Source: Isurus oxyrinchus (Eukaryota). From it: a stretch of DNA of 64,000 bases. Shown here piece after piece: positions 1,897-63,631 of the stretch. The stretch is from assembly GCA_026770705.1 (NCBI GenBank), contig JANJGN010000052.1:1612001-1676000 (forward strand), in the 5' to 3' direction. The notes beneath the pieces are model-generated. The model had not been told where the DNA came from, made no database searches, and saw nothing but the letters and a program-made list of their open reading frames with translations. The first letter of the stretch is position 1; each line of letters starts with the position of its first letter. The position numbers and the translations under genes were made by a program.

Positions 1897-1993
1897 TTTC
1901 TCACACGCTTGGAGATGAAGAATCCACTCAGTCCAACACTCAAACAGATTCCAGCTCCAAACAATCCTGCTTTCCATTCATTGGAATCTCGCC
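1897..1993 (-). CDS. Gene A transmembrane exon (R)RDSNEWKAGLFGAGICLSVGLSGFFISKRVRK, uncharged TM
   Basis: tttacag acceptor, gtaagt donor, 97 nt, phase 1 to 2; same size and clear homology to the TM exon at 61346-61442. Confidence 0.85.
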
Positions 1994-2149
1994 CTGTAAA
2001 ATCAGCCAATGAATGACTCCGGTACAGTTTGAGAATGGTTCCCTATGTACATGTAGTAATTCTGAACTTGTGAAGTGATATTTTCTATGCATGAAAGGTC
2101 TATACAAATAACATATATCCATGTACATGCAGGTTTCTATAAGGAGGAT

Positions 2150-3195
2150 TCACATATAACAGAGGTGCCAAGCTGCTGAGGTGACACACAGGACTACATA
2201 CACACCAAACAGCGGAAACAACATGCTATAGACAGAGCAAAGCGATCCCACAACCAACGGGTCAGATCTAAGCTCTGCAGTCCTGCCACATCCAGTCATG
2301 AATGGTGATGGACAATTAAAGATCTAACAGGAGGAGGATGTTCCACAAATATCCCCATCCTTAATGATGGGGGAGCTCAGCACATCAGTGCAAACGACAA
2401 GGCTGAAGCATTGGCAACCATGTTCAGCCAGAAGTGCTGAGTGGATGCTCCATCTCGGCCTCCTCCAGAGGGTCCCAGCATCACAGATGTCAGCTTTCAG
2501 ACAATTCGATTGACTCCACGTGACATCAGCAATCAGCTGATGATACTGGATACAGCAAAGGCTATTGGCCCTGGCAACAACCCAGCAACTGGAAATAATG
2601 TGGCTACAAGAGCGGGTAAGAGGCTGGGAACTCTGTGGTGAGTAACTCACCTCCTGACTCCCCAAAGCCTGTCCACCATTGGACAAGGCACAAGTCAGGA
2701 GTCTGATGGAATAATCTCCACTTGGCTGGATGAGTGCAGCTCCAACAACACTCAAGAAGCTTGACACCATCCAGGAGCAGCTTGTTTGATCGACAGCCCA
2801 TCCACCAGCATAAACATTCATACCCTCCACCACTGGCACACAGTGGCAGCAGTGTGCACCATCTACAAGATGCACTGCAGCAACTCACCAAGGCTCCTTC
2901 GACAGCACCTTCCAAACCCTTAACCTCTTCCACCAAGACAGTTCCAAGTCAGTGTGGTGTGTGACTTGGAGGCGAACTTGTGGTGTTGGTCTTCCATGAG
3001 ATTTGGAAATATATCGGCCGTACCTTCACCGTCGCTGGGACAAAATCATGGAACTCCCTCCCTAACAGCACTGTGGGTGTACCTACACCACATGGACTGC
3101 AGTAGTTAAAGAAGGCAGCTCACCACCACCTTCTCAAGGGGCAGTTACAGATGGGCAATAATTTCTGGCCTTGTCAACAATGCCCATATCCCATG
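2150..3195 (+). mobile_element. Degenerate non-LTR LINE (CR1 group) fragments
   Basis: Same family recurs at 19100-19550, 35125-36230 and 56550-58600; the latter two carry the RT motif TIFSCFIND. Confidence 0.7.
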
Positions 3196-3234
3196 AGCTA
3201 ATAAAAACAGAATGTTCAATTCTGTGTAACTCAC

Positions 3235-3516
3235 GTTCCACAGTGATGGTTATGAACCCCTCCACTGCTCCATGTTCATTCTCTGCCACACACTGATAGT
3301 CTCCAGTGTCCCTGGATGTAACGTGAGGAATCACCAACCACAGCTCATTGTTGGAACTTGTTCTGTTCATTGGGACATTAAGATGTCGCCACGTCAGGTT
3401 AGAAGCTGGGAAGCTCTCGACAGAGCAGATTATCACTGCAGAATTCCCCTCAATTATATTGATCGATGAAGCGTTAATCATATCAAGAGAAGTAATTGAT
3501 AGGTTCCGTGGTGCAT
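3235..3516 (-). CDS. Gene A Ig C2-set exon 3 (membrane-proximal)
   Basis: 282 nt, phase 1-1, AG/GTGAGT; C..W..DxGxYxC Ig motifs (IICSVES, LTW, DTGDYQC). Confidence 0.9.
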
Positions 3517-4569
3517 CTAAATACAAATAAAGGTTTCATTGTGAGCAAACACAGTGCACAGCAAGACTCCATGATACATCTCTCTCTATTTGGTGTCTAT
3601 GTGCATTTCAAGGTTTCTGTCCAGTTTTAAGTTCCTATGTCAACTTTTATAATGGTCACTGCCGGCGTTTTTCTTTTTGTACTTTCATGGGAAGTGGCTG
3701 TATCTATCTAGACCAGCATTTATTACCCATCCCTAATAGCCCTTGAGGAGGTGGTGGTGAGTTTTTCACCCCCGCAGAATTCCCAGCCTCTGACCGGCTC
3801 CTGTAGCCACAGTATTTATTGGCCGGTCCAGTTAGGTGTTTGGTTAACATCCCCCAGGATGTTGATTGTGGGGGATTCAGTGATAGTAAACTCACTGAAC
3901 ATCAAGGGAAGTTGGTTAGATTCTCTCTTGTTGGACATGATCACTGCCTGGTGCTTGTGATGCATTATTTCTCATTTCTCAGCCCAAGCTGAGTGTTGCT
4001 AAGCTCTTGCTGCGTGTGGATATGTAAACTGTCACGCTGTAATTACAGCCTTCCACCAGAGGAGACACTGTCAGGCTAGGAGAAAAGAAAATGTCTTTCA
4101 CATCATCAGGATGTTCACAGGGATTTGACAGTGGAGGAATTGCTTTAGAATAATGGGGTATTGAGTGATAAACCTACAATTCTCTGTGCAGGGGGCTGCT
4201 CGTCCAATACAGGGTCTTGTTCAGCTGATGTCGTCAGTGTTTCAGAGCAGAATCTGGAGCAACACTCCAGTGCAGCACAGGGAGAACAGACAACACACAC
4301 ATGTCTGTGTGTGTGTGAGCAAGCACACGTGTGATTCTGTGTATGTTTCCTTCTGTGTGTGTGCATGCAGGTGTACACACCTGTGCACATGTGGGATTGC
4401 ANNNNNNNNNNNNNNNNNNNNNNNNNNNNNNNNNNNNNNNNNNNNNNNNNNNNNNNNNNNNNNNNNNNNNNNNNNNNNNNNNNNNNNNNNNNNNNNNNNN
4501 NNNNNNNNNNNNNNNNNNNNNNNNNNNNNNNNNNNNNNNNNNNNNNNNNNNNNNNNNNNNNNNNNNNAC

Positions 4570-4851
4570 ATTCCACAGTGATGGTTATGAATCCCTCCAC
4601 TGCTCCATGTTCATTCTCTGCCACACACTGATAGTCTCCAATGTCCCTGGATGTAACGTGAGGAATCACCAACCACAGCTCATTGTTGGAACTTGTTCTG
4701 TTCATTGGGACATTAAGATGTCGCCACGTCAGGTTAGAAGCTGGGAAGCTCTCGACAGAGCAGATTATCACTGCAGAATTCCCCTCAATTATATTGATCG
4801 ATGATGCATTAATCACATCAAGAGAAGTAATTGAGAGATTCTGTGGTGCAT
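4570..4851 (-). CDS. Gene A Ig C2-set exon 2
   Basis: 282 nt, phase 1-1, near-identical to 3235-3516; donor GT abuts an N gap. Confidence 0.88.
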
Positions 4852-4984
4852 CTAAAAACAAATAAACATCAATTAAGTTACACTGACTGTGAAGCACTTT
4901 GAAAGACACTGACAATGTGAAAGGTGTGATATCAATATAGGTTCTTTCACCACAAAGCCCATAATCCAGCCAGACACCTCAGTT

Positions 4985-5640
4985 CAGTACTGAGGGTGTG
5001 CTGCACTGTGGGAGGGTCAGTACTGAGGGAGTGCTGCACTGTCAGAGAGTCAGTACTGAGGGAGTACTGCACCATCAGAGATTCAGTACTGAGGGAGTGC
5101 TGTACTGTCGGTGGGTAAGTACTGAGGGAGTGCTGCACTGTCAGAGAGTCAGTAAGGAGGGAGTGCTGCACTGTCAGAGGTTCAGTACATAGGGACTGCT
5201 GCACTGTCTGATGGTCAGTACAGAGGGGTTGTTGCACTGTCGGAGGGTCAGAAATGAGGATGTGCTGCACTCTCAGAAGGTCAGTACTGAGGGGGTGCTG
5301 CACTGTCGAAGAGTCATTACTGAGGGGGTGCTGCACTGTGGGAGGGTCAGTACTGAGGGAGCACTGCACTGTTGAAGGGTCAGTACTGAGTGAGTGCTGC
5401 ACTGTCGAAGGGTCAGTACTGAGGGAGTGCTGCACTGTTAGAGGGTCAGTACAGAGGGAGTGCTGCACTGTCAGAGGGTCAGTACTGAGGGAGCACTGCA
5501 CTGTTGAAGGGTCAGTACTGAGGGAGTGCAGCACTGTCAAAGGGTCAGTACTGAGGGAGTGCTGCACTGTCAGAGGATCAGTACTGAGGGAGTGCTGCAG
5601 TGTTGGAGAGTCAGTATTCAAGGACTGCTGCAGTGTCAGA
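4985..5640. repeat. 33-bp SINE-derived minisatellite (AGTACTGACCCTCTGACAGTGCAGCACTCCCTC family, reverse orientation)
   Basis: About 20 degenerate units; the family recurs nine times in the window. Confidence 0.9.
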
Positions 5641-5761
5641 GGCGGATTTGTATCAGTTAAAGACTATTGATTTGTTGCTAAACACAATGCAGTTGTGGGA
5701 TCTTGCAGTGTACTATGAAGAGCATTCTAGCTAATGTAGATGGAAGGGTGTCCATTCTTAC

Positions 5762-6058
5762 ATTGCACAGTTAGTATGAGGGTCTGCTCCGATGAAACAG
5801 ATGGATATCTCACTCTGCAGCTGAGAGTGTGTCCGTGGTGTTTGAGTGATGGGATCAGGGTCAGAACAGAAGTATAGGTCAGAGTGACACCATGCTGAGT
5901 TACAGTGTTTGAGACTGATCCAGGTACGTCAGTGGGAGTGTCCCAGGTTAAGACAGGTGCTGCTGTTCCATTGCACATTGTGTTGAAGGTGCAGCTTACA
6001 TCCACACGCTTTCCTGCAATAATTTCAGCAGGGAATATCGTGGGTTTATCTGTGAAAT
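5762..6058 (-). CDS. Gene A Siglec domain-2-type C2 exon (DFTDKPTIFPAEIIAGKRVDVSCTFNTMCNG...LTVQ)
   Basis: 297 nt, phase 1-1, ttag/gtaaga; carries the extra B-C loop Cys (C-x5-C) that in Siglecs bonds to the V domain. Confidence 0.9.
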
Positions 6059-6429
6059 CTAACAGACAGGGAATGGATCCTTTTAGAGAAATATAATGTG
6101 AAGCATCAGTTCAAATAGAAACCACAGTCCCATAACAGAAAGCACTTTTACAAGGATGATATCAGAACTGAGATGTTTTAACGATCCTGATAGACTGTTA
6201 GACACGATTCGAGAGATCGATGGGAGTGGAATACATTTAATCATTGATATTAAAGTGAGTTTTAAATGTTGCTTTAGGACTGAACTGGAAGCTATCAGCA
6301 GGTTATTGAGAATCAGACAGTGTGTTATAATATGCTGTGTTTTGTGTTAATATGTAAACGTCACAGTTTGTGTTATTTCCCATTGAGTGTTGAATGTGAA
6401 TTGTTGAGTAATTATAACACAGCACTTAC

Positions 6430-6798
6430 CAGAAACGTGAAGCCGGGTTACAGGGTAATAGTTATGGCTCGGACCATTGTCAAATTCTATTCTGAAAAAA
6501 TAAGGTCCTGCATCTTCCCGTCTGATGTTGTTTATAATCAGGGAACAGTCGCCATCTTTCAGGTCTCCAGACAGCCGGGTCCGATGGTGGAACCGTGGTA
6601 ACTCGTGACTGTGATCCTTGGAGTGAAAGGCAATGGGAGCCCAGGGAATCTGTTTCTCATTATTAAACCAGACTCCATCTCGCGGTTGGTTTTCCAGACA
6701 CGATGGATAACTGTAATGAAATGGAATCTGTACACACGAACCTTCCTGCACTGTCACCTCTCGTGGAGTGTCACCTTTCCACTCTTGTGAGGGTTCAG
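6430..6798 (-). CDS. Gene A Siglec-type V-set exon 2
   Basis: 369 nt, phase 1-1; N-terminal W, GSCVQIP, DCSL, YFFR (essential Arg position); B-strand Cys replaced by Phe. Confidence 0.9.
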
Positions 6799-6849
6799 CT
6801 GGGGAGAGAAATCTCAATATTTATCTCTGGATGGTTTGTGGATCCACTG

Positions 6850-7725
6850 AACCCGATATTTACAGATGAGGCTGAATTGGGGGGATGGTCAATACTGAGG
6901 AGGACTGCAACAAATTGCAGGATGATATACATTCTGATGAAGAATCATACGGACTCGAAACATTAACTCTGTCTTCCTCTCCACAGATACTGTCAGACCT
7001 GCTGAGTTTTTCCTGCAATTTTTGTTTTAGTTACAGATTTCCAACAGCTGCAGAATTTTGCTTTTACATTACAGAAAGATATTAATAAACTTGCAGAATG
7101 GGCAGGTCATTGACAAATGAGTTTCTACGTTAATAAATGTGAGGCATTACATTTTGTTCAGGAAAATGAGGAGCTTGTATCTTACCTCGAAAATAAGAAT
7201 CTAATTGGGGTAGAGGAACAACGTGATCTGGGCCGGAAATACAGGAATCAGTAAATGTGGGGACACAGGTTAACAAGGGAATTAAACAATCAAACTAAAC
7301 ACTCAAGATTATTTCTCCAGGGATTGAATTGAAAAGTAGAGAAGTGATGTGAAACTTGTCCTGAACCTGGTCTGTCTGCACCTGGAGTCACGTGTGCAGT
7401 TCTGGTCCCCATATTGTAAAAAGGATATAGAGACACTGGAGAGGGTGGTAAAAAGCTTCACAAGGATGATCTCAGCAATGTGAGGCTTTACCTATCAGGA
7501 GAGGCTGAACAGGCTGGGTCTCTGTTCTCTTGAACAGAGAAGGTTGAGGGGTGACCTCATTTGACCTTTGAAGTAATGAAAGGTTTTGATCGAGTAGACA
7601 TGGAGAGAGTGTTTCCACTCCTCACAATGAACAAAACCAGAGGCTGACAATATAACATCCTCACTAATAAATCCAATGGGGAATTCAGAAGAAAATTATT
7701 TTCCCAGAGACTGGGGAGAATGTGT
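6850..7725 (+). mobile_element. CR1-type LINE 3' fragment with a nested Penelope-like end (6933-7065)
   Basis: EEDCNKLQDDI resumes after the insert (gaaagatattaataaacttgcagaatgg); typical CR1 ORF2 tail follows. Confidence 0.7.
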
Positions 7726-8454
7726 ACTTAAAGAATCACTTCATTGGCTGTGAATCAGTTTAGGATCGTCCTGAGGTGGTGAAAGGCGCTATGGAAATGT
7801 GAGACTTGCTTTTGTATTTTGAAAGCAGGTTTCCAAGATTGAGATGGGAACTGAGAGGTAACAACAATCAGCAGCAACTTTCCTATTTTCAAACTTGGTG
7901 GGGAATGTGTCACTGAGCTGAATACACTTTCACTCCCAGACCCTTGAATTGCCAACACTGGGGTGTGGGTGATGGAGCAGCCCACAGCTCATGGAACCCT
8001 GGCTCATCATTCTCTCAGAGATCTGGGTCACTGATCCCATTGCTCTCTGTGGGAGCTTCCTGTGTACAAACTCACTGCCACGTTAGACAGTGACTATACT
8101 TCAAGAATTTCTTCATTGTCTGTGAAGTGATTTGGTACGTGGTGAAAGGTGCTATAGAAATGCAAGTCTTTACTTTGTCGATTTGCCAGACTTTTAAATG
8201 GGGATTAGAGAGTTCTATGGGAGTGGATAACCTGATAACATTGATGGACACAGTCAACACATTTAACCATTGATATTAAAGTGAGTATTAGACGTTGCTT
8301 TAGGACTGAATTGGAAGCTATCACCAGGTTATTGAGATCAGACAGTGTGTTATAATAAGCTGTGTTTTGTGTTAATATGTAAACGTCACAGTTTGTGTTA
8401 TTTCCTACTGAGTGTTGAATGTGAATTGTTGAGTAATTATAACACAGCACTTAC

Positions 8455-8823
8455 CAGAAATGTGAAGCTGGGTTACAGGGTAATAGTTATGTCTCGGACC
8501 ATTGTCAAATTCTATTCTGAAAAAATAAGGTCCTGCATCTTCCCGTCTGATGTTGTTTATAATCAGGGAACAGTCGCCATCTTTCAGGTCTCCAGACAGC
8601 CGGGTCCGATGGTGGAACCGTGGTAACTCGTGACTGTGATCCTTGGAGTGAAAGGCAATGGGAGCCCAGGGAATCTGTTTCTCATTATTAAACCAGACTC
8701 CACCTCGTGGTTGGCTTTCCAAATGTGCTGGATAACTGTAATGACATGGAATCTGTACACACGAACCTTCCTGCGCTGTCACCTCTCGTGGAGTGTCACC
8801 TTTCCACTCTTGTGACAGTCCAA
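8455..8823 (-). CDS. Gene A Siglec-type V-set exon 1
   Basis: 369 nt, phase 1-1; GSCVQIPC, DCSL (Siglec B-E intrasheet disulfide pattern), YFFR. Confidence 0.92.
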
Positions 8824-10182
8824 CTGGGGAGAGAAATATCAATATTTAACTCTGGATGTTTTTTTGATCCATAATTCTTGATATCCACTCCCTCCATCAC
8901 TGGGGCACAGTGGCTGCAGTTTGGACCATCTACAGGACACACAAGTAACTCCCCAAGGTTTCACAATGGATCGATGAGAGTCCTGGACACAGGAGTGGAC
9001 AAGTTCATTCTACCTTGGTTCATGGTCCTCAGGACTCTATTTAGTTTTTTCAAATTATTCATTCATGGGATTTATTACCCATCCCATGTCCATCAGAGGC
9101 ATTTAATAGTCAACCACATTGCGGTGGGATTGGAGTGATATGTAGGCCACACTGGGTAAGGGTGGCAGATTTCCTTCCCTGAAGGTGATCAGTGAACCAG
9201 GCTTTTTAATCCCATTCATCTGCCATGATGGAATTCACACCCAGGGCCCCAGAGCATCACCCTGGGCCTCTGGAATACTAGCCCAGTGACAATACCTCTC
9301 TGCTACCGCTTCCCCTTAGTGAAGCCAGTCTTCTACCCAACACAGTGTCTACAAGACGCACTATTTGAGATCCATTCAATGCTGATTTACAAGACAGGAC
9401 AATGGATTAGGAGCCCTCAGAACTCCCCCCATTATCACCGTCATGAATCACTAATTAGCCTAACATTCCTGTCTGCTCTTCAACACAGCTGATTGAATCA
9501 GATTAGCCAATCTGATTGGTGTTCATTCCCTCTTCAACTTTTAAGGAATCACCAATCACTCGGCCTCTAGTTATTCCCCTGCCCACAAGAGGGAACATTC
9601 TCTGTCTACCCAGTCAACCAAAACATTTCATCTAATCCTAGTGGTGCTTGAGTATATAGTCGGGAATCCAGGGCAATGGAGCCTCAGGAGAAGAGATGGA
9701 AACGCTGTGAGGTGGAATGTCACTGAGGCCATCCGAGTTGAAGCGACTTTTGGAGAGAATTCCAAGGCAAGATCTTCGAAGTTGAAGATTGGAATCCCTC
9801 ATGAGAGAAACAGAGTTTCAGTGAGATTGGTTGACTGACAGTGTTCACTGATGTCCGGGTGGGTTGTTGTGAAATCCATGGGATCTGTCTTGGTCGCGTT
9901 TACAATTTAATGAATAATGTGGCTGTGAGACCACAGTTTGTCTGTTAATTCACATGAGCTAATGTTAATCCAGAATGTTAGGGTATAAGGTGGATATTGT
10001 GAATTATTTTATCTTTCTGAGCTGGTGCAGTCAAGTTTATTTCTGTTTGTTTAAAATCCATGGAATTTTGTAGCTTTATTCTCTTCGCAAGTGTCTTAAA
10101 TCTCAAACCTCTTCTACTTGAAACAAAATATTATTGGTTCCTAACTATAAATTTTCAAAAAAATTGGGTGTCTGTTCCTCCA

Positions 10183-11408
10183 TCAGCAACTCTTCAGAAT
10201 CCTGCTGAAGTCACGGATATTTCAGAAGGACAGGGAACAAGAAGTTTCTGGTATCAGCGTTTTGTGTGGGGCCCAGTTCAGTTTGAACAAATAAACAACA
10301 CCATCTTTGAAAGTCATGAACCCACCGCAGCGGCACCTCCGACACATGCAGAGCTCAGGCGAGAGGCGCTTTGTTAGTGTGTTTCACAGTGTCTGCTGGA
10401 GTAGGGTCAGTGCTGAGAGGGTCTGCTCAAGGATCATAACAACCTGCACTTGCACCTTCCAAGTAATAAGATTTTGTAAATGTATTCATTCATGGGATGT
10501 GGGCGTCGCTGCCAAGGCCAGCATTTGCTGCCCATCTCTAATGTCCCGTGACATAATCTCTGTAGCAGAGTAGAGACAATCATGATCACTCAGGATATTT
10601 GACATCTATCCACAAGAGCAGCTTAGGCTTCCTTCTCTCTTTCAGTTATCTTACTCCCTTATTGAAGTTTCTAGCATGGTGAGAACTGGATGGTTTGCTC
10701 GGACATTTCAGAGGAACCACGTTGCTATGAGTCTGGAGTCACATGTAGGCCAGACCAGATATAGACGGCAGATTTCCTTCCCTACAGGCCATTAGTGAAC
10801 CAGATGGGTGTGTATGACAATCGATGATAGTTTCATGGTCTCCATTACTGAGACTAACTCCCATTAGTGTAAACAGAGTGAACAGTTTTCCATTGATCCC
10901 ACCTTTCCCGTTCTCTCCGGTATTTTACACACTATTGCTCGATAATTTGATTCTGCCAAGGACCCCTTGGAAAATTATGGACACCAATTAGACAACCGAT
11001 GGAATAAGGAATCTCGTTGGATCCTCATTGTCTGAGGAATCTCTATGCATTCTCATTGTCTAAGGAATCTCTTTGGATCCTCATTGTCAAAGGGATTATT
11101 TCTGATCCAAACCCCATATTGTTGTATTGTTGATTCCGATGCAGCATTGTAGACTGACTTGTCCCCAAGCTCAGCACTGACCCTACTCCAGCAGACCCTG
11201 TGAAACACACTAACAAAGTGCCTCTAGCCTGAGCTCTGCATGAGTCGGAGGTGCCACTGTGGTGGGTTCATGACTTTCAAAGATGGTGTTGTCATTTTTT
11301 TTGTTCCAACTGAACTGGGCCCCACATGAAGTGTTGATACCAAAGACCTTGTGTTCCCTGTCCTTCTGAAACATCTGTGATTCAGCAGGATTCTGAAGAT
11401 TTGCTGAT
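10183..11408. repeat. Local inverted repeat, arms ~10183-10418 and ~11170-11408
   Basis: Arms align as reverse complements; both yield the ...PPTHAELR.EALC ORF on opposite strands. Confidence 0.85.
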
Positions 11409-12280
11409 AAGGGTCTTAAATTGTCTGATTGTTGATTGATACAACACAGGAGGAGCTCATGTGACCCATCGTGCATGTGCTGATTCTTTCCCAATTCCTC
11501 TCCAACACCTTTCGCACATTCCTGCAAATTTCCCTTCAAGTATTTATCCAGTTCCCCTTCTGAAAGTTCCTGTTGAATCTGCTTCCACCGCTCTTTCAGG
11601 CAGTGAGGCAATGGTCTCTCTCTGAGCTGCAAAGTGCCCAGATTCCGTGAAATTTAAACTATGCAGCAGATCAGAGACACTCATGATAACTAAGAATATT
11701 TGACACCTTTACACACAGACAGTTTTGCCTCCCTTCTCTCTTTCAGTTATCTTGCTCCCTTATTGAAGTATCTAGCAAGGTGAGAATGGACAGGAAGTGT
11801 GACACTGAACAGCCTGTCTATTCTAGGAGCTGCTGTGCTGTCTTCATGGGCAATTTTGAATAAAGGCAGCAAAGGATACAAATTTCAGGCCATTGCTATC
11901 GGAGACCTAACATTAGGATAGACTTCATCCCCCAGTTTTTATCCGTGCTTCTCGACTCAACCCATCACTCCCCATCGCTCACTGACCAACGTCCGATAGC
12001 ACCTGGATTTTAAGATTCTGCTCTCGCTGCTACAACCCTGCCTATCCCTGTAAACTCCTCCAGCCCCTACAACCCTGCAAGACCACTGGTCTCCTCCAAT
12101 TCTGCTGTCAGACAGGGAGTCAGTGTATATCAGTGAGCACAGGGGTGATGGGTGAATGGGACTTGGTGTGAGTTTGTACACTGGCACACTGCTGAATCAG
12201 TTCCCTATCAGAGCTCAATAAGAATGATCTTTTACAAAGACTATTAACCATAAATCTGTCTGAGCTGACAATGGTATTAC

Positions 12281-12320
12281 CTTGGAGAAGTGACAGGAGG
12301 AAGTAAGATTTCCCGATCAT
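12281..12320 (-). CDS. Gene A signal-peptide exon MIGKSYFLLSLLQ(G); exon with UTR 12281-12362
   Basis: ATG, hydrophobic core, CAAG/gtaat phase-1 donor, ctttcag acceptor upstream. Confidence 0.9.
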
Positions 12321-12770
12321 TGTCCACTCCCAGATATTTCCTCAGCTTCTAACTCTGAAGTTCTGAAAGAGAAAGGAGTTAATGAGACTTCACCTCTTGT
12401 CCGACAGCTCTCGAGAGATCAGAACTGCTTTTAGACAATATCTTCACAGACAAATTTGATTCTCTGTGGGATGATAGGTGCTCTGCAGAGAGTTACAAGG
12501 CTTTAAGAAAGAAAAACACTGAAGGACTTGCATTTCTATAGCACCTTTCACCACCTCAGGACACCCCAAAGCTCATGTCCCTGCTCTTCTCTCATCCCTT
12601 GAGCTAGAAAGATGTTCTGTACAACAGACTTGAGCCTCACACCCAGATCTCAATAATCAGTAGAAATCTTTCAAAGGCATCAATCATTGGAATCTGTCTT
12701 TATAAAGTCACAACATCAACAAAGGACGGTGTTGGTGGTGGAAGTGAATTCCAATCGTTCCGTTACTTAC

Positions 12771-12912
12771 CCAGGACCTGTCCGACTGCTCGCCTGGGGA
12801 GGAACTGCCCACACGCTCTGCTTGGGCTGAATGACCTCTTCCTGTGCTGATCCATCTGTGTATTTAATTAGAAAGGATTGATGTGTCTCTGTGAGACAAA
12901 ATGAGGAAGTTG
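12771..12912 (-). promoter_or_regulatory. Gene A non-coding first exon and proximal promoter with PU.1/ETS-type site AAAATGAGGAAGT (12898-12910)
   Basis: CTGG/GTAAGT donor; block conserved in three copies; the TSS is not determinable from sequence. Confidence 0.6.
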
Positions 12913-12989
12913 GAACAAAGTGAGTGAACAGCACTTTGCTGTGCACTGTCAGTAAACCCTGTGTCTGTATAAGAATATAAGAACAGAAC

Positions 12990-22013: not shown

Positions 22014-22053
22014 ATGATCGGGAAATCTTACTTCCTCCTGTCACTTCTCCAAG
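22014..22053 (+). CDS. Gene B signal-peptide exon MIGKSYFLLSLLQ(G)
   Basis: Identical peptide to the gene A leader; phase-1 donor gtaat. Confidence 0.9.
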
Positions 22054-25943: not shown

Positions 25944-26309
25944 CTGGACTACCACAAGTGTGGAAAGGTGACACTCCACGAGAGGTGACAGCGCAGGAAG
26001 GTTCGTGTGTACAGATTCCGTGTCATTACAGCTACCCATCATATTTAGTACCGAGATCACCTGTTGGAATCTGGTATATGAGAAGGAATTGGGAAAGATG
26101 GTCTATAGCCTTTCACTCCAAGGATCACAGTCGCAAGTTACCACGGTTCCACCATCGGACCCGGCTTTCTGGAGACCTGAAAGATGGTGACTGTTCGCTG
26201 ATTATAAACAACATCAGACGGGAAGATGCAGGATATTATTTATTCAGAACAGATTTTGACAGCAGGAATAGATACAACGACCGTCCTGAAACCCAGCTTC
26301 ATGTTTCTG
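25944..26309 (+). CDS. Gene B Siglec-type V-set exon 1 (divergent loops)
   Basis: 366 nt, phase 1-1; GSCVQIPC, DCSL, YYLFR. Confidence 0.92.
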
Positions 26310-28039: not shown

Positions 28040-28405
28040 CTGAACCCTCGCAAGAGTGGAAAGGTGACAATCCACGACAGGTGACAGTGCAGGAAGGTTC
28101 CTGTGTACAGATTCCATGTCATTACAGTTATCCATCGTGTCTGGAAAACCAACCGCGAGGTGGAGTCTGGTTTAATAATGAGGAATGGAGAACATCGTCT
28201 ATAGCCTTTCACTCCAAGGATCACAGTCACGAGTTACCACGGTTCCACCATTGGACCCGGCTGTCTGGAGACCTGAAAGATGGCGACTGTTCCCTGATTA
28301 TAAACAACATCAGACGGGAAGATGCGGGTCCTTATTTTTTCAGAATAGAATTTGACAATGGTCCGAGCCATAACTATTACCCTGTAACCCAGCTTCACGT
28401 TTCTG
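28040..28405 (+). CDS. Gene B Siglec-type V-set exon 2
   Basis: 366 nt, phase 1-1; GSCVQIPC, extra Cys in PSCL, DCSL, YFFR. Confidence 0.92.
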
Positions 28406-29133: not shown

Positions 29134-29430
29134 ATTTCACAGATAAACCCACGATATTCCCTGCTGAAATTATTGCAGGAAAGCCTGTGGATGTAAGCTG
29201 CACCTTCAACACAACGTGCAATGGAACAGCAGCACCTGTCTTAACCTGGGACACTCCCACTGACGTACCTGGATCAGTCTCAAACACTGTAACTCAGCAT
29301 GGTGTCACTCTGACCTATACTTCTGTTCTGACCCTGATCCCATCACTCCAACACCACAGACACACTCTCAGCTGCAGAGTGAGATATCCATCTGTTTCAT
29401 CGGAGCGGACCCTCGTACTAACTGTGCAAG
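29134..29430 (+). CDS. Gene B Siglec domain-2-type C2 exon
   Basis: 297 nt, phase 1-1, near-identical to 5762-6058. Confidence 0.9.
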
Positions 29431-29753: not shown

Positions 29754-29905
29754 GACATCTGAATATCACAATGAACAGAACAAGTTCCAACAATGAGCTG
29801 TGGTTGGTGATTCCTCACGTTACATCCAGGGATACTGGAGACTATCAGTGTGCTCAGAGAATGAACATGGAGCAGTGGAGGGGTTCATAACCATCACTGT
29901 GGAAC
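29754..29905 (+). pseudogene. Dead C2 exon of gene B (5' half missing, 1-nt frameshift)
   Basis: Matches the 3' half of the 282-nt C2 exon; TGTGCTCAGAG versus intact TGTGTGGCAGAG. Confidence 0.85.
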
Positions 29906-31019: not shown

Positions 31020-31159
31020 ACAGTGGAGGAGAGATTCTGCACGTGATCCTGATCCTGGGAATACGAGCTGTGATATTCCTTGTGGCTGTGGTTATCACTA
31101 TCACTGGAGTCTGTGTCTGGGAGAGACAAACAGTGAAAGGAAGTCGACAGACTGTTTGA
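31020..31159 (+). CDS. Gene B terminal TM exon (D)SGGEILHVILILGIRAVIFLVAVVITITGVCVWERQTVKGSRQTV*, Arg in TM, activating type
   Basis: Pyrimidine tract ttctttctgtgtgttctctag; phase 1 matches the upstream donor; long hydrophobic stretch; stop at 31157-31159. Not in the ORF track. Confidence 0.8.
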
Positions 31160-45155: not shown

Positions 45156-45424
45156 CACGTCACTGTCTTCAGCTCTGAGACTGTCAATCCTCACCAAACA
45201 ATTCTTCCCTTCCAAGTCGCCGATTATTTTAGCACGTCCCACGAATGTGGGATCTTTGGTGTATGTGATGGTATATTTCCATCTATACCAATATTTATAC
45301 CAAGCTCCGTGCAGTGCTGTGTAAGAGTGGGAAGGAAAGTCAAAGCTACACGGAATAACCACACAAGAGCTGCTGATGGCCCTCCGAGGCAGCGCCTTCA
45401 TAGACCATCCCTCTGACTTGACTC
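45155..45424 (-). pseudogene. Gene E divergent Siglec-type V exon, 3'-truncated
   Basis: tttcag acceptor phase 1; GW…SSCVVIPCSFDFP…W…GDLEGKNC…EDSD, then Gypsy sequence; no donor. Confidence 0.85.
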
Positions 45425-45469
45425 CTGAAAGGCAACAAGGGAGGGGACTGAACATCAAAAAGCAGAATA

Positions 45470-56549: not shown

Positions 56550-58600
56550 ACTGTCACTGGCGAGGCCAGAATTTATTGCCCATCCCTAATTGTCCTTGAG
56601 AATATGGGGGTGAGCTGCCTTCCTGAGCTGCTGCAGTCCCTGTGGTGTATGTACACCCACAGAACTGTTTGGGAGGGAGTTGCAGGATTCTGACCCAGCG
56701 ACAGTGAAGGAACGGTGATATATTTGCAAGTCAGGATGGTGAGTGACTTGGAGGGGAACTTCCAGGTGGTGGTGTTCCCATGTGTCTGCTGCCCTTGTCC
56801 TTCGAGATGGTAGTGATCATGTGTTTGGAAGGTGCTGTCTAAGGAGGCTTGGTGACTCCCTGCATTGCATCTTGTAGATGGTACACACACTGCTGCCACT
56901 GTGCGTCAGTTGTAGAGGGAGAGAATGTTTGTGGATGGGGCGCAAATCAAGCGGGGCTGCTTTGTCCTGGACGGTGTCGAGCTTCTTGAGTGTTGTTGGA
57001 GCTGCACTCATCTAGGAAAGTGGAGAGTATTCCATCACTTCTGACCTGTGCCTTGAGGTTGGTGGACAGGCTTTGGGGAGTCAGGAGGTGAGTTACTCAC
57101 CACAGGATTCCCAGGCTCTGGCCTGCTCTTATAGTCACAGTGTTTATATGGCTAGTACAGTTCAGTTTCTAGTCATTGGTAACCCCCAGAGTGTTGATAG
57201 TGTGGGATTCAGCAATGGTGATGCTATTGGACATTAAGGGGAGATGGATATATTCTCTCTGGTTGGAAATGGTCATTGCCTGGCACTTGTGTGGCATGAA
57301 TGTTACTTGCCACTTGTCAGGCCAAGCCTGGATATTGTCCAGGTCTTGCTGCATTTGGACATGGACTGCTTCAGCATCTGATGAGTCATGAATGATGTTG
57401 AACGTTGTGCAATCAACAGCGACCTTCCATAATTCTGACCATCTGATAGAATGAATGTCATTGATGAAGCAGCTGAAGATGGTTGGGCCTAGGACACTAC
57501 ACTGAGCAACTCCTGCAGTGATGTCCTGGAACTGAGATGACTGACCTCCAACAAGCACAACCACCTTCCTTTGTACTTGGTATGAATCCAACGAGTGGAG
57601 AGTTTTCCCTGTGACATGACATGGCAGATGATGTGTGCTTGGTGCTCCAAATCCACAAGGGAAAATTGTTCAAGCTATCACAATAGTTTTGCAATTTGTA
57701 TTTATTACAAGAAGCGTGCACTGAATTCAGGAGTAATGAGATGACCACAACCTTTAGAGATTTTAAAAATTCAATTAAGATATTTATTAACAAAATAAAA
57801 GATTTCAAGCACAGACATAATACCACGGTTAGTTACAGCTAAAATATATTCTCAAATTCCTAATTAACCTGACTCCCAGTTACAGAGCCTGTTTAAGGCA
57901 ACAGTCCAAAATAAGATTTTAGATTAAAAACAAATCCAGCGAGTTAACACAGCACACACTTGACACTGGAATTCTAAATGGATTTCTCCAACTTTATTTA
58001 CTGAACATAACAGACTTATGCACAAATGCCTGGAGGCTTCTTCAAGCCTGTTTCACACACTCCTGTTAGATCTTACATGGCCCCCAACATAGCCTTTCAT
58101 TCTCCTTTATACATGTTTCTCTCTCTTTGATGTGTAAATTCTTTGGAACTGTACCTTTCCCATAATATAAACTTTCATGTTGCCAATATTGTCAATGAAG
58201 TTTGGGTAAAATTAAAAAAAAACTCCTTTGCTTATTGGGCTTGTCCTAAACAGACCAACATCCCTTTGAAATCTAAACAGCCCCTTCACACCTTACATGC
58301 TAAGGCAGCCTCCATGTGTTCTCATTAGCATTTCAAGTACATTTCTACACCTAGCTTCTTTTGATAATCTCAAACTTGCAGTCTACCTGTCTCCAGATGT
58401 AATTAAACTACACAGACAGACCCATCTACACTCACACCCATAAACCTAGTTTACAACAAACCAGGAAAATATTAAGCAAATTATTATACTTTCGTACCAC
58501 CCCTGATACCCATTGACTCCAGTTTTGCTCGGGCTCCTAGATGCCACACTCGGTCAAATGCAGACTTGATGTCAAAGGCAGTCACTGTCACCTCACCTTG
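56550..58600 (-). mobile_element. LINE RT/3' fragment interrupted by a solo LTR at 57610-58499
   Basis: SVLGPTIFSCFINDI; insert has TG…CA ends, and the LINE (gagagttttccc|…gatacccattgactcc) resumes as at 35477-35510. Confidence 0.8.
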
Positions 58601-58790: not shown

Positions 58791-59039
58791 TCAGTTTTTC
58801 TGGAACCTGATCTGTGCGTATTCCGTGTCCTCGCTCCTGTGCACAGTCCTGTCACCGCTGGGCAGCTTTGAAAAGTTGATGTTGGCGTAGAGAAGCTCGT
58901 CGGTATTGTCGGGGTTCCCATGTCCAACATCGCCTCCCACTGGACCTTCAGAGAGACCCCGGGGAGCTGGGGTCTCCCCCTCACTAGTTGTGTCTCTGGT
59001 TGTGTTCCGGGGCTCAGTAATCAGCACTTTCTGTTTACC
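58791..59039 (-). CDS. Gene D terminal exon with ITIM (LLYANI) and ITSM (TEYAQI)
   Basis: ctctgtag acceptor, phase 0, open to TGA; motif pair as in CD33-related Siglec tails. Confidence 0.92.
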   Translation of the reverse strand, partial: GKQKVLITEPRNTTRDTTSEGETPAPRGLSEGPVGGDVGHGNPDNTDELLYANINFSKLPSGDRTVHRSEDTEYAQIRFQKN

Positions 59040-59489: not shown

Positions 59490-60175
59490 CTCAGTGCTGA
59501 CTCCTGACAGTGCAGCACTCCCTCGGAACTGCCCCTTCAAGAGGGCAGCGCCCCTGGAAAATGGACTCTTCGACAGTGCAGCACTCGCTCAGTACTGTCC
59601 TCAGTACTGACCATCCGACAGTGCAGCACTCCCTGAGTACTGACCCTCCGACAGTGCAGCACTCCCTCAGTTCAGACACTCCGACAGTCCAGCACTCCCT
59701 CAGTACTGACCCTATGACAGCACAGCACTCCCTCAGTACTGACACTCTGACAGTGCAACACTCCCTCAGTACTGACCCTCCAACAGTGCAGCACTTCCTC
59801 AGCACAGACCGTCTGACAGTGCAGCACTCCCTCAGTACTGACCCTCCAACAGTGCAACACTCCCTCAGTACTGACCCTCTGACAGTGCAGCACTTCCTCA
59901 GCACAGACCGTCTGACAGTGCAGCACTCCTTCAGTACTGACCTTTTGACAGTCCAGCAATCCCTCAGTACTGACCCTCTGACAGTGCAGCACTCCCTCAG
60001 TACAGACACTCTGACAGTGCAGCACTCCCTCAGTACTGACCTTCTGACTGTCCAGCACTCCCTCAGCACAGACCCTATGACAGTCCAGCAATCCCTCAGT
60101 ACTGACCCTCCCACAGTCCAGCACTCCCTCAGCACAGACCCTATGACAGTGCAACACTCCCTCAGTACTGACATC
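59490..60175. repeat. 33-bp minisatellite
   Basis: Tandem units. Confidence 0.9.
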
Positions 60176-60385: not shown

Positions 60386-60467
60386 CTGGTGTTTCACAGA
60401 GAGTGGACTGGGGGTCAATGCAATGTCACTGGTCCCTGAAACTCTCTCCTCCATCGCTGTCTTTCTC
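60386..60467 (-). CDS. Gene D cytoplasmic exon RKTAMEERVSGTSDIALTPSPLSVKHQ
   Basis: 82 nt, phase 2 to 0, joins the TM and terminal exons in frame. Confidence 0.88.
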
Positions 60468-61345: not shown

Positions 61346-61442
61346 TTTCTCACACAGATGAAGATGAAGATTCCAGCCAGGAAAACACTCAACATGATCC
61401 CAGCCGTGAATAATCCTACTGTCCATTTACTGGAGTCTCTAC
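61346..61442 (-). CDS. Gene D transmembrane exon (C)RDSSKWTVGLFTAGIMLSVFLAGIFIFICVRK
   Basis: 97 nt, phase 1 to 2, tttacag/gtaagt, uncharged hydrophobic helix. Confidence 0.9.
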
Positions 61443-62259
61443 CTGTAAAAACAGCCATTAATTACTGCACTACAGGTTTACAATGATGCTCCGATGTATC
61501 TCGAGAAGCGATACACTCACTCAATGTTTAAATACTCATTCTCGGGCAATGCTGACATTTATTGTCCATCCCTAGTTTCCCCTTGAGAAGGTGGTGGGGG
61601 GTCTTCCTCCTGAACCACTGGTTTGTCCCAAACTGGGAGACCAGTTCAGAGGGCAGGTCAGAGTTAACCATGTTGGTGTCTGAGACTGGAGTCACATCCA
61701 CATCGAGACATGCTTCCCTCCCTAAAGGGTATGTAGTCTCTACACATGTAACAACCAACCTCACTGAAATAATTGACTATCAGCTCATTATCACATGGTG
61801 GTTTGCGGGATCTTGCTGTGCACAAATCAGTACCTGTGTTTCCTACATTACAACAGTGAGCTCACTTCGATAATGCTTCACTGGCTGTTGAATGTTTAGT
61901 AATTTCTAAGCAATTTATGAATACAGGTGTTGCATTTCAAAGTAATCCATGTAACATTTATATATAATATTTATCAATTAAAGAATGAGAAGTTCAGCAA
62001 TTAAAAGGGTTGTTCAGGACAGTTAGAGAGAGAAAGGTCGTCAAGTATGGAGATTGGAAACGAAGACCTGACAGCCTTGTCCTCACAACCATTGAAGGAG
62101 AAACTGAGAGCAAAAACAGAAAGGGAGAGGAAAAATTGGATGTGTGGATAACGTGGACTGAGCGAGGATTGAAGAAAACTGGATTAAAAACAACACGATC
62201 CCAATGGCTCCACGGAGACCACGGAGACAACAAACAAACAAATGTATCTCCACACTCAC

Positions 62260-62541
62260 ATTCCACAGTGATGGTTATGAACCCCTCCACTGCTCCATGT
62301 TCATTCTCTGCCACACACTGATAGTCTCCAGTGTCCCTGGATGTAACGTGAGGAATCACCAACCACAGCTCATTGTTGGAACTTGTTCTGTTCATTGGGA
62401 CATTAAGATGTCGCCACGTCAGGTTAGAAGCTGGGAAGCTCTCGACAGAGCAGATTATCACTGCAGAATTCCCCTCAATTATATTGATTGATGAAGCGTA
62501 AATCATATTAAGCGAAGTAAATGAGAGATCCTGTGGTGCAT
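62260..62541 (-). CDS. Gene D membrane-proximal C2 exon
   Basis: 282 nt, phase 1-1, AG/GTGAGT. Confidence 0.9.
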
Positions 62542-63350
62542 CTAAAAACAAATCAAATGTTTAATGTGAGCAAACCTATTGCACAGCAAGACTCCATGCA
62601 TCATCTCTCTGTATCTGATGTCTGAATGCATTTCCAGGTAACTTCCCTCAGGATAACGTCTTATGCCACATTTTTAATGGACACTGCCTATGTAAACTGT
62701 CACACTGCAGTTGCATTCTCCCACCAGTAGAGGTGTTGTCCATCTAGAATGAAAGAAGCTTGCTTTCACATCCTCAGGATTTCGCAAAGGGCTGGACAGG
62801 CAATGAATTGTATTTGATTGATGGAGCACTGAGGGGTAAATCTACAATTCTCTGTTCAGGAGGTTGCTCATCCAATTCAGGGTCTTGTTGATCTAGAGTT
62901 TACCTTCCTTCAACACAGAATCGGAGCTGATACCAAGACTCCAGTGCGGCACTGAGAGAGGAGAGGGAACTCACGTGTGTGTATCTGTGTGTTTGTGTTT
63001 CTGCACATGTGAGTGTGTTTGTGTGTGTATGCACACGTGTGTCTGTGTGTGCGCATGCGCATGTGTCTGTGTGTCTAGGTCTGTCCATGAGTGAGAGTAT
63101 GTGCATGTGTGTGTCTATGTGTGGGCATGAATGTGTGTGTGTGTTTGAGATGGGTGTGTATTTTCCTGTGTATGTGTTTGTATGTGTATGACTGTGTGTG
63201 GATAATTATGCATGTGTGNNNNNNNNNNNNNNNNNNNNNNNNNNNNNNNNNNNNNNNNNNNNNNNNNNNNNNNNNNNNNNNNNNNNNNNNNNNNNNNNNN
63301 NNNNNNNNNNNNNNNNNNNNNNNNNNNNNNNNNNNNNNNNNNNNNNTCAC

Positions 63351-63631
63351 GTTCCACAGTGATGGTTATGAACCCCTCCACTGCTCCATGTTCATTCTCT
63401 GCCACACACTGATAGTCTCCAGTGTCCCTGGATGTAACGTGAGGAAACACCAACCACAGCTCATTGTTGGAACTTGTTCTGTTCATTGGGACATTAAGAT
63501 GTCGCCACGTCAGGTTAGAAGCTGGGAAGCTCTCGACAGAGCAGATTATCACTGCAGAATTCCCCTCAATTATATTGATCGATGAAGCGTTAATCATATC
63601 AAGAGAATTAATTGAGAGATTCTGGGTGCGT
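63351..63631 (-). pseudogene. Gene D C2 exon with a 1-nt deletion near its 5' end
   Basis: 281 nt versus 282; ag|ACGCACC-CAGAAT versus ag|ATGCACCACAGAAT. Confidence 0.7.

What the first reader, a model, noticed from the sequence alone, without database searches (positions are those of the whole stretch)
1897..63631. Paired activating/inhibitory Siglec-like receptor system in a probable cartilaginous fish
Seen: closely related ectodomain exons are attached to two opposite signalling ends. Gene D has an uncharged TM plus ITIM/ITSM; gene B has an Arg-containing TM plus a short Tyr-free tail. Gene A links them, sharing leader, V and C2 exons with B and C2 and TM exons with D. Known: this is the logic of mammalian paired Siglecs (Siglec-5/14, Siglec-11/16), where a basic TM residue recruits DAP12. 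Inference: a lineage-specific, probably independently evolved paired sialic-acid receptor family. I cannot confirm that it is undescribed.
Basis: partly seen in the sequence, partly recalled or inferred. Interest (0 to 1): 0.92.

Follow-up and report, generated by a model that had tools for sequence, protein, structure and literature searches.

The report
Shark activating/inhibitory Siglec-like receptor cluster
This stretch of a shark genome holds several closely related Siglec-type immune receptor genes, one ending in inhibitory motifs and another in an arginine-bearing membrane anchor typical of activating receptors, so the paired on/off design known from primate Siglecs also exists in sharks.

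Summary
The window carries four Siglec-type V-set exons, Siglec-type C2 exons, and three kinds of membrane and tail ends.

- **Gene B (+ strand):** leader, two V exons, one C2 exon and a unique last exon, 31020-31159. That exon encodes a membrane span with a buried Arg and a 12-residue Tyr-free tail.
- **Gene D (- strand):** uncharged membrane span plus ITIM (LLYANI) and ITSM (TEYAQI).
- **Gene A (- strand):** its V and C2a exons are about 95% identical to B's, and its C2b exons about 96% identical to D's. Its membrane exon is a different class from D's (23 of 35 residues), and its tail lies off the window.

The V domains are Siglec by sequence (Siglec-5, E 5e-16), by fold (the top ~37 listed PDB matches are all Siglecs) and by the conserved Cys and Arg residues.

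Contigs from three public runs (two organisms, three studies) splice C2a directly to the Arg exon at GT..AG. These contigs are 97-99% identical to the window, not exact.

The Arg cassette is conserved in two other shark species. The V domains cluster by species rather than by signalling type, which suggests concerted evolution of the ectodomains.

No exon spans an assembly gap.

Sialic-acid binding and the adaptor partner are untested.

RefSeq already holds automatic "Siglec" models of these genes in many elasmobranchs, and I found no paper on them. This scan noted the same system on other pieces of this genome.

The parts
22014..22053 (+). Gene B leader exon (MIGKSYFLLSLLQ, donor G|GTAAT, phase 1)
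   Evidence: The coding sequence reads the same as gene A's leader.
25944..26309 (+). Gene B distal V-set exon (V25.9), phase 1/1. It has the CxxxPC and DC cysteines and the Arg in YLFRTD.
   Evidence: It is 83% identical in DNA to the other V exons.
28040..28405 (+). Gene B proximal V-set exon (V28), with the YFFRIE arginine. It is 94.9% identical to A's V6.
   Evidence: A spliced joint 28404->29133 is seen in runs X1, X6 and X8.
29134..29430 (+). Gene B C2-set exon (C2a, Siglec domain-2 type)
   Evidence: A joint to 31020 is seen in three runs.
29756..29905 (+). Remnant 3' half of a C2b exon in gene B. It has no acceptor and is out of frame in the window.
   Evidence: One contig (X5, about 93% alike, with one extra T at 29852) splices it to 31020.
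31020..31159 (+). Gene B last coding exon: membrane span with a buried Arg (codon 31064-31066), a 12-residue Tyr-free tail and the stop codon
   Evidence: It is unique in the window. The cassette is conserved in P0006, P0157, P0022 and P0098. Spliced use is seen.
12281..12320 (-). Gene A leader exon
8455..8823 (-). Gene A distal V-set exon (V8), with the full Siglec Cys pattern and the Arg
6430..6798 (-). Gene A proximal V-set exon (V6). The Arg is kept, but the second Cys of CxxxPC is Phe.
5762..6058 (-). Gene A C2a exon
4570..4851 (-). Gene A first C2b exon. The assembly gap starts 2 nt after its end.
3235..3516 (-). Gene A second C2b exon
1897..1993 (-). Gene A uncharged membrane exon (EWKAGLFGAGICLSVGLSGFFISKRVRK), donor AA|GTAAGT
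   Evidence: It is 87% identical to great white shark P0017.
1118..1202 (-). Gene A first cytoplasmic exon. The rest of the tail lies off the window.
63351..63631 (-). Gene D C2b exon, 1 nt shorter than its paralogs. An assembly gap follows it.
62260..62541 (-). Gene D second C2b exon
61346..61442 (-). Gene D uncharged membrane exon (KWTVGLFTAGIMLSVFLAGIFIFICVRK)
60386..60467 (-). Gene D cytoplasmic exon 1 (RKTAMEERVSG...KHQ)
58791..59039 (-). Gene D tail exon with ITIM LLYANI (58878-58895), ITSM TEYAQI (58809-58826) and the stop codon
17052..20384 (-). Orphan D-type 3' exons in the centre of the palindrome. Tail copy 20384-20136 reads LLYANP plus TEYAQI and is open. cyt1 copy is at 18962-18881. 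Tail copy 17300-17052 has an in-frame TAA at 17138-17136.
45162..45461 (-). Divergent Siglec-type V-like exon fragment. It ends before the F-strand Arg, beside a gag-like ORF.
   Evidence: It has no Pfam hit.

Best explanation
The window is part of a multigene cluster of Siglec-family receptors in a shark.

What each gene encodes:
- Each gene has a leader, one or two sialic-acid-type V-set domains, and C2-set domains.
- Gene D ends in an uncharged membrane span and a tail with an ITIM and an ITSM 23 residues apart. Two tetrapod relatives in the CD33-related V clade (P0035, P0027) have the same motifs. The inferred role is recruitment of SHP-type phosphatases to damp signalling.
- Gene B has lost its C2b domain. 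Its C2a exon is spliced straight to a conserved cassette exon that encodes a membrane span with a buried arginine and almost no tail. The inferred role is pairing with an acidic residue in an ITAM adaptor chain to give an activating signal.

How A and B relate:
- They are the two arms of an inverted duplication (about 5.7-12.9 kb against 29.5-21.4 kb).
- Their V and C2a exons are kept about 95% alike, probably by gene conversion, while their membrane ends are unrelated.
- This is the paired-receptor design of primate Siglec-5/14 and Siglec-11/16, arrived at separately in elasmobranchs.

Shown here: the exon structure, Siglec membership of the V domain, the motifs, spliced use of the Arg exon (this copy or a near-identical one), and conservation of the cassette in other sharks.

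Inferred only: sialic-acid binding, the identity of the adaptor, and the signalling outcome.

Siglec identity:
- Pfam V-set and Ig_CD22 match.
- By PDB phmmer, the 17 best hits are all Siglecs, E 5e-16 to 2e-12.
- The AlphaFold2 model has pLDDT 91.5.
- By Foldseek, the top ~37 listed matches are all Siglec V-sets, TM 0.8-0.89.
- The Cys21/Cys26/Cys83/Arg101 columns are conserved across 25 sequences, including tetrapod CD33-related ones.

Transcription:
- GT..AG joints 29430->31020 are seen in X1, X6 and X8. These are two organisms and three studies.
- Joint 28405->29134 is seen in the same runs.
- Joint 29905->31020 is seen in X5.
- A V-to-V joint is seen in X1.

Conservation of the Arg cassette:
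- The motif ..VILILGIRA.IF.. followed by ER.TVKGSRQTV occurs in S. torazame (P0006, P0157), Chiloscyllium punctatum (P0022) and P0098.
- P0157 has the same C2a-to-cassette junction as gene B.

Tail homology:
- Shark ELLYANINFSKLP..TEYAQIRF compares with turtle DLHYASVDFSK..TEYSEIRLK, with the same 23-residue Tyr-Tyr spacing.

Concerted evolution:
- V domains of Arg-cassette proteins group with ITIM proteins from the same genus (the two Scyliorhinus species), or with the neighbouring gene in this window. S. torazame P0006 and P0157 group with S. canicula P0001 at 100/100, and window V28 groups with V6.
- The whole elasmobranch clade has support 99/92.
Against: - No binding or signalling data exist.
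- The RNA contigs are 97-99% identical to the window, not exact. They may come from another individual, a sister species, or a paralogous copy on another piece of this genome. The C2a contigs carry gene-A-type letters at 29185, 29349 and 29358.
- The C2a side of the key joint is only 22-30 letters long.
- The runs are labelled 'RNA?' by guess. Only the spliced joints argue that they are RNA.
- B carries a dead half exon and sits in a rearranged palindrome with orphan exons.
- A 2014 survey found no FcR-gamma in sharks (PMC4016189), so the adaptor is not established.
- The ITIM gene that shares B's V domain is not seen whole. A's tail and D's V exons are both off the window.
- D's first C2b exon has a 1-nt deletion.
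Confidence: 0.7

Rival explanations
1. Gene B is a decaying by-product of the inverted duplication. On this view it is a truncated copy of A that happens to lie upstream of a cassette exon, and it makes no functional activating receptor in this species.
For: - B has a half C2b exon with a frameshift and no acceptor.
- The surrounding palindrome holds orphan and stop-containing exons.
- No laid contig matches the window exactly.
Against: - The leader, both V exons, C2a and the Arg exon are all open, with canonical sites and matching phases.
- The same C2a-to-cassette architecture exists in S. torazame P0157.
- Spliced contigs with this joint are seen in three runs.
- The Arg and the short tail are conserved between orders of sharks.
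Confidence: 0.12
2. The receptors are Siglec-fold proteins that no longer bind, or never bound, sialic acid. They would recognise another ligand, so the 'sialic-acid receptor' label would be wrong even if the paired signalling logic holds.
For: - Binding is untested.
- The V domains form their own elasmobranch clade, apart from tetrapod CD33-related Siglecs.
- The C-C' region differs sharply between the four V copies.
- V6 lacks one canonical Cys.
Against: - The essential F-strand Arg sits in the Y-F-F-R-x-E context in V8, V6 and V28, and as Y-L-F-R-T-D in V25.9. This column is conserved in at least 90% of the 25 aligned relatives.
- The best structural matches are ligand-bound Siglec V-sets.
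Confidence: 0.15
3. The duplicated and inverted arrangement is an assembly artefact, caused by collapsed or mis-joined haplotypes around seven gaps. On this view A and B would be alleles or mis-placed copies of one gene.
For: - There are seven N gaps, two of them directly after C2b exons.
- The region is rich in a 33-bp satellite.
Against: - The arms are 83-95% identical, not near 100%, and the identity differs between segments.
- The 3' ends are unrelated in sequence.
- Both end types exist as separate genes in other sharks.
- No gap lies between B's exons.
Confidence: 0.03

Closest known systems
Primate paired Siglecs (Siglec-5/Siglec-14, Siglec-11/Siglec-16)
   Same: - The V and first C2 exons are near-identical between partners.
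- One partner has ITIM-type tyrosine motifs. The other has a basic residue in the membrane span and a short tail.
- The ectodomains appear to be kept alike by gene conversion.
- The genes are neighbours in one cluster.
   Different: - This system arose separately, inside an elasmobranch-only V clade.
- The Arg cassette is old. It is shared by carcharhiniform and orectolobiform sharks, so it is not a recent lineage event.
- The genes are arranged head to head in a palindrome.
- Tandem V exons are present.
- The adaptor is unknown.
- The comparison with the primate pairs rests on established knowledge, not on a test made here.
CD33-related Siglecs of tetrapods (Siglec-3, -5, -7, -8, -10)
   Same: - They are the best PDB sequence matches.
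- They share the Cys pattern and the F-strand Arg.
- Domain 2 is of the same C2-set_2 type.
- The tail carries L-x-Y-A-x-(I/L/V) plus T-E-Y-x-x-I with the same 23-residue spacing.
   Different: - The V domains do not nest within the tetrapod CD33-related clade, which has support 100/99 as a separate group.
- Orthology is therefore not shown.
Human Siglec-12 (two V-set domains)
   Same: - Two V-set exons lie in tandem.
- A V-to-V spliced contig is seen.
- RefSeq names several shark models 'Siglec-12'.
   Different: - All four shark V copies keep the essential Arg.
- The resemblance is architectural only.
- That human Siglec-12 has two V-sets is from my own knowledge.
RefSeq predicted proteins of elasmobranchs
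   Same: - The models include XP_072326180.1 and XP_072326181.1 (S. torazame), XP_072409577.1 (C. punctatum), XP_041037179.1 and XP_041037180.1 (C. carcharias), and XP_078389734.1 (C. maximus).
- They belong to the same family, at 66-92% identity per exon.
- They carry the same three kinds of membrane and tail end.
   Different: - These are automatic models with borrowed mammalian names.
- No paper in the searched library describes them as a paired system.

Membership tests
Siglec family (I-type lectins) | N-terminal V-set Ig domain of Siglec type, by sequence and by fold | tested here: met
   - Pfam V-set and Ig_CD22 match.
- By phmmer against the PDB, the 17 best hits are all Siglecs, with Siglec-5 at E 5e-16.
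- The AlphaFold2 model has pLDDT 91.5, and Foldseek's top ~37 listed matches are all Siglec V-sets.
Siglec family (I-type lectins) | Essential arginine on the F strand (Y-F-F-R-x-E context) | tested here: met
   - It is present in all four V exons: YFFRIE three times and YLFRTD once.
- It aligns to the YFFRVE Arg of Siglec-5.
- The column is at least 90% conserved in alignment A2.
Siglec family (I-type lectins) | Unusual cysteine pattern: B-strand and E-strand Cys, plus an extra Cys (C-x-x-x-P-C) for the link to domain 2 | tested here: met
   - V8, V25.9 and V28 have SCVQIPC...DCSL.
- V6 has Phe in place of the second Cys.
- C2a has the extra Cys, in VSCTFNTMC.
- The disulfide bonds themselves were not checked in a model.
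Siglec family (I-type lectins) | C2-set Ig domains following the V-set | tested here: met
   - C2a matches Pfam C2-set_2, and C2b matches Ig_3 and I-set.
- C2a hits MAG (E 4e-5) and CD33 (E 9e-4). Nectin-4 scores slightly better, at E 1.5e-6.
Siglec family (I-type lectins) | Binding of sialylated glycans | not testable with these tools
   This needs glycan arrays or cell binding with Arg mutants.
CD33-related Siglec subgroup | Tail with a membrane-proximal ITIM and a distal ITIM-like motif or ITSM | tested here: met
   - Gene D has LLYANI and TEYAQI, 23 residues apart.
- The turtle protein P0035 and the protein P0027 have the same motifs; the 23-residue spacing was counted against P0035.
CD33-related Siglec subgroup | V domain groups with tetrapod CD33-related Siglecs in a tree | tested here: not met
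   - The elasmobranch clade (99/92) is separate from the tetrapod CD33-related clade (100/99).
- The tree is unrooted and has only 123 columns.
- The cluster therefore works like CD33-related Siglecs but is not shown to be orthologous to them.
Paired activating/inhibitory receptors | Near-identical ectodomains joined to different signalling ends | tested here: met
   - A and B are about 95% identical over V and C2a, while B's last exon has no similarity to any other exon in the window.
- The C2b exons of A and D are 96-97% identical.
Paired activating/inhibitory receptors | Activating member has a basic residue inside the membrane span and a short tail without signalling motifs | tested here: met
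   - The Arg lies within a hydrophobic stretch of about 27-29 residues.
- The tail is ERQTVKGSRQTV and has no Tyr.
Paired activating/inhibitory receptors | Inhibitory member with the same ligand-binding domain carries an ITIM | tested here: inconclusive
   - D has the ITIM, but its V exons are off the window.
- A shares B's V domain, but its tail is off the window.
- In other sharks the same V type is found with ITIM/ITSM tails, for example P0002 and P0015.
Paired activating/inhibitory receptors | Activating member is expressed and uses its charged membrane exon | tested here: met
   - GT..AG joints 29430->31020 are seen in three runs.
- The contigs are 97-99% identical to the window, so the copy of origin is not certain.
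Paired activating/inhibitory receptors | Association with an ITAM adaptor (DAP12, FcR-gamma or CD3-zeta) | not testable with these tools
   - No shark adaptor sequence was available through the tools.
- A 2014 survey found no FcR-gamma in sharks.
- Unchecked scan notes claim an FcR-gamma-like gene elsewhere in this genome.

The most novel reading that the evidence does not exclude
The CD33-type Siglec signalling module, and an adaptor-coupled activating counterpart, were already in use in early jawed vertebrates. The module here means an ITIM plus an ITSM at fixed spacing. In sharks, a single conserved Arg-membrane cassette exon has been kept for more than 150-200 million years. It is repeatedly re-paired with fast-evolving V domains that gene conversion keeps homogenised. 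That would be an ancient arms race over sialic-acid mimicry with pathogens, and the adaptor could be a non-mammalian one.
Probability: 0.3. Interest if true: 0.75.

Novelty: new member of a known kind. Interest (0 to 1): 0.6.

Why it matters
Reviews treat Siglec-1, CD22, MAG and Siglec-15 as the ancient, conserved Siglecs. They treat the CD33-related group, with its inhibitory and activating pairs, as a fast-evolving feature described mainly in mammals (PMC9630641, citing Bornhofft 2018).

This cluster shows three things in elasmobranchs:
- A multigene Siglec family with CD33-type ITIM/ITSM tails.
- Arg-membrane activating partners.
- Signs of concerted evolution of the ectodomains.

The paired design is therefore either much older than thought or has been reinvented. 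Either way, it gives a concrete system for testing how sharks read sialic acids and which adaptor chain they use. That question is open, because FcR-gamma was reported missing from sharks.

Tried and rejected
- **Leader exons next to the V exons:** I looked first and found none. tblastn with shark homologues then placed them 3.4-3.9 kb upstream.
- **A's tyrosine tail:** I searched 1-1900 with the C-termini of P0017 and P0007 at relaxed E-values. Only cyt exon 1 matched.
- **More bearers of the Arg cassette:** The search for homologous proteins on the last 53 residues of P0006 returned only two proteins, because of its word-index and length limits.
- **Literature:** searches for Siglecs in cartilaginous fish, sharks and elasmobranchs, for shark DAP12/TYROBP, and for shark paired Ig receptors found no paper on this system.
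- **dN/dS between copies:** computed, but the counts are too small to read selection from them.
- **Retroelement ORFs:** Pfam on ORFs near 35 kb and 57 kb gave only weak reverse-transcriptase matches. The gag-like ORF beside the 45-kb V fragment had no hit.
- **Joined models:** Every search used single exons by reference, so no full-length model of A, B or D was scored.
- **Assembly gaps:** I did not fill or look up any gap.

Full report
**What the window is.** It is vertebrate DNA rich in a 33-bp satellite, CA/TC simple repeats and LINE fragments. It has seven N gaps. Six-frame reading and Pfam show a set of Ig exons: four V-set exons that also match the CD22-type first Ig domain, two CD80-like C2-set exons, and four Ig_3/I-set exons plus one half copy.

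**Exon map.** Borders and phases were read directly from the sequence.

| Gene | Strand | Exons |
|---|---|---|
| A | - | leader 12320-12281; V 8823-8455; V 6798-6430; C2a 6058-5762; C2b 4851-4570; C2b 3516-3235; uncharged TM 1993-1897; cyt1 1202-1118 |
| B | + | leader 22014-22053; V 25944-26309; V 28040-28405; C2a 29134-29430; dead half C2b 29756-29905; last exon 31020-31159 |
| D | - | C2b 63631-63351; C2b 62541-62260; uncharged TM 61442-61346; cyt1 60467-60386; tail 59039-58791 |

- A's remaining tail lies beyond the start of the window.
- D's 5' end lies beyond the end of the window.
- All Ig exons are phase 1/1 with AG...GT borders.
- B's last exon starts in phase 1, so it fits directly after C2a.
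- That exon encodes SGGEILHVILILGIRAVIFLVAVVITITGVCVW ERQTVKGSRQTV stop. It has one Arg deep in the hydrophobic span and no Tyr in the tail.
- D's tail carries LLYANI, a canonical ITIM, and TEYAQI, an ITSM.

**Gaps, tested first.**
- No exon spans a gap.
- Gap 4402-4567 begins two bases after the last base of A's first C2b exon, so only the GT of the donor is kept.
- Gap 63219-63346 begins four bases after D's first C2b exon.
- Both sit in the same CA/TG-rich intron of two paralogs. This makes a single unsized intron the simplest reading, but continuity and the number of C2b exons remain unverified.
- The other gaps are in simple-repeat DNA away from any exon.

- A's TM exon is homologous to D's but shares only 23 of 35 residues. 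In the great white shark, the A-type TM (P0017) and the D-type TM (P0013) belong to neighbouring genes with different tails.
- A's tyrosine tail is not in the window.
- D's first C2b exon is 281 nt against 282 nt in its three paralogs. This is a 1-nt deletion that would shift the frame unless the exon is skipped or the base is an assembly error.
- Both A and B have two tandem V exons.
- A and B are the arms of an inverted duplication (about 5730-12913 against 29462-21421). Identity varies along it: 95% over V6/V28 and C2a, 83% over V8/V25.9, and 89-93% around the leaders.
- The centre of the palindrome holds orphan D-type 3' exons, one of them with an in-frame stop.
- A divergent, truncated Siglec-type V fragment lies at 45.2-45.5 kb beside a gag-like ORF.

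**Is it a Siglec?**
- The V exon's 17 best PDB sequence matches are all Siglecs: Siglec-5 at 5e-16, then Siglec-7, -8 and -10, MAG, CD33 and sialoadhesin. The first non-Siglec, pIgR, follows at 2e-8 over a partial stretch.
- The alignment to Siglec-5 lines up the SCVxxPC and DCSL cysteines and the YFFR(I/V)E arginine.
- These columns are conserved across 25 aligned relatives, including tetrapod CD33-related proteins.
- An AlphaFold2 model of B's V28 exon has mean pLDDT 91.5.
- Its top ~37 listed Foldseek matches in the PDB are all Siglec V-sets, with TM 0.8-0.89.
- C2a is the C2-set_2 type and matches MAG and CD33 domain 2, with nectin-4 scoring slightly better.
- Sialic-acid binding itself cannot be tested here.

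**Whose genome?** The nearest proteins among 1.8 billion representatives are RefSeq models from sharks and rays. The species are Scyliorhinus canicula and S. torazame, Cetorhinus, Carcharodon, Mustelus, Chiloscyllium, Stegostoma, Hemiscyllium, Hypanus, Hemitrygon, Pristis, Mobula, Rhinoraja and Narcine. Identity is 66-92% per exon, and the models are named Siglec-8/10/11/12/13/14, CD33-like or MAG-like. 'Probable cartilaginous fish' is supported. The species is not identified.

**Is B real?** Three lines of evidence bear on this.
1. *Intact reading frame.* All of B's coding exons are open and splice-compatible.
2. *Conserved cassette.* The Arg cassette recurs in S. torazame (P0006, P0157), Chiloscyllium punctatum (P0022) and P0098. 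The motif VILILGIRA.IF and the tail ER.TVKGSRQTV are preserved. P0157 joins C2a directly to the cassette, as B does.
3. *Spliced contigs.* Contigs from public runs laid on 25850-31350 show GT..AG joints:
   - 28405->29134, in X1, X6 and X8.
   - 29430->31020, in X1, X6 and X8, which are two organisms and three studies.
   - 29905->31020, in X5, on a contig about 93% alike whose extra T at 29852 restores the remnant's frame.
   - A joint from the end of a V25.9-type exon to a V8-type exon start, which shows that V-V transcripts exist.

There are limits. These are assembled contigs, 97-99% identical to the window. The C2a contigs carry A-type letters at three positions. The C2a side of the key joint is only 22-30 letters long. 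So the evidence is for this exon class being used as predicted, in this copy or a near-identical one.

**Evolution.** A careful maximum-likelihood tree of 64 V domains (123 columns) gives these results:
- All four window V domains sit in an elasmobranch-only clade with support 99/92.
- That clade is separate from the tetrapod CD33-related clade (100/99).
- Inside the elasmobranch clade, V domains of Arg-cassette proteins group with ITIM-tailed proteins of the same or a sister species. S. torazame P0006 and P0157 group with S. canicula P0001 at 100/100, and window V28 groups with V6.

The cassette is conserved across species while the ectodomains cluster by species. This is the pattern expected from gene conversion between paired receptors.

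D's tail resembles that of two relatives in the tetrapod CD33-related V clade (turtle P0035 and P0027) in both motifs, and its 23-residue Tyr-Tyr spacing matches P0035. The signalling module may therefore be ancestral, even though the V domains are not shown to be orthologous.

**Mechanism.** D-type receptors would recruit SHP-type phosphatases through the ITIM and ITSM. B-type receptors would need an ITAM adaptor with an acidic membrane residue. Both steps are inferred from how the mammalian families work. The adaptor is unknown:
- A 2014 survey reported no FcR-gamma in sharks (PMC4016189).
- Unchecked first-reader notes of this scan claim an FcR-gamma-like gene elsewhere in this genome.

**Novelty.**
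- I found no paper on shark Siglec pairs in the library searched.
- A review places only Siglec-1, -2, -4 and -15 in the vertebrate ancestor (PMC9630641).
- The genes are already present as automatic RefSeq models.
- This scan has noted the same system on other pieces of this genome (s1-868674, s1-866815). A follow-up report exists on the same cassette (s1-300793).

I class it as a new member of a known kind.

**Not done.**

Noticed in passing
window 4984-5642, 17446-17862, 20609-21198, 29459-29495, 31891-32376, 38599-39008, 41027-41232, 52012-52295, 59599-60172: A 33-bp satellite (about CCCTCAGTACTGACCCTCTGACAGTGCAGCACT) is scattered through the cluster. It sits exactly where A-B homology ends, just after C2a (5730 against 29462). 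It is at very high depth in the run contigs. It could be the substrate for the rearrangements that remodel these genes.
   Followed up: partly
window 45162-45461 (-), with ORFs 44080-45187 (-): This is a divergent Siglec-type V-like exon fragment. Its best PDB hits are MAG (1.5e-7) and sialoadhesin (5.6e-7). It stops before the F-strand Arg, right beside a gag-like ORF. It is probably a V exon cut by a retroelement insertion. Pfam gives no hit for either the fragment or the ORF.
   Followed up: partly
window 953-1265 (-), 12606-12918 (-), 21418-21728 (+): A segment of about 310 bp holding A's first cytoplasmic exon occurs three times, at 95% identity. One copy is in place after A's TM exon. 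The other two are orphans about 500 bp upstream of the A and B leader exons, mirrored by the palindrome.
   Followed up: partly
window 17052-17300 (-) and 20136-20384 (-): Two extra copies of the ITIM/ITSM tail exon read LLYANP instead of LLYANI, so the ITIM is lost, but both keep TEYAQI. The 17-kb copy has an in-frame TAA where great white shark P0013 has Gln. P0013 shows that the LLYANP variant is a real tail type in another shark.
   Followed up: partly
window 6430-6798 (-) against 8455-8823 (-), 25944-26309 (+) and 28040-28405 (+): The four V copies differ most in the stretch after WFNN/WYMR: KQIPWAP, EWRTSS and RNWERWS. This lies between the predicted C (39-44) and C' (54-57) strands of the V28 model. 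From my own knowledge, this loop sets ligand preference in Siglec-7, so the tandem V domains may differ in specificity.
   Followed up: no
window 35189-35903 (-) and 57169-57591 (-): These are LINE-type reverse-transcriptase fragments (Pfam RVT_1, E about 1e-5, below the curated cut-off), 87% identical to each other.
   Followed up: partly
window 1-372; 46549-49334: There is a 24-bp tandem repeat at the start of the window. A 2.8-kb array with a 72-bp unit has extreme GC skew (about -0.7).
   Followed up: no
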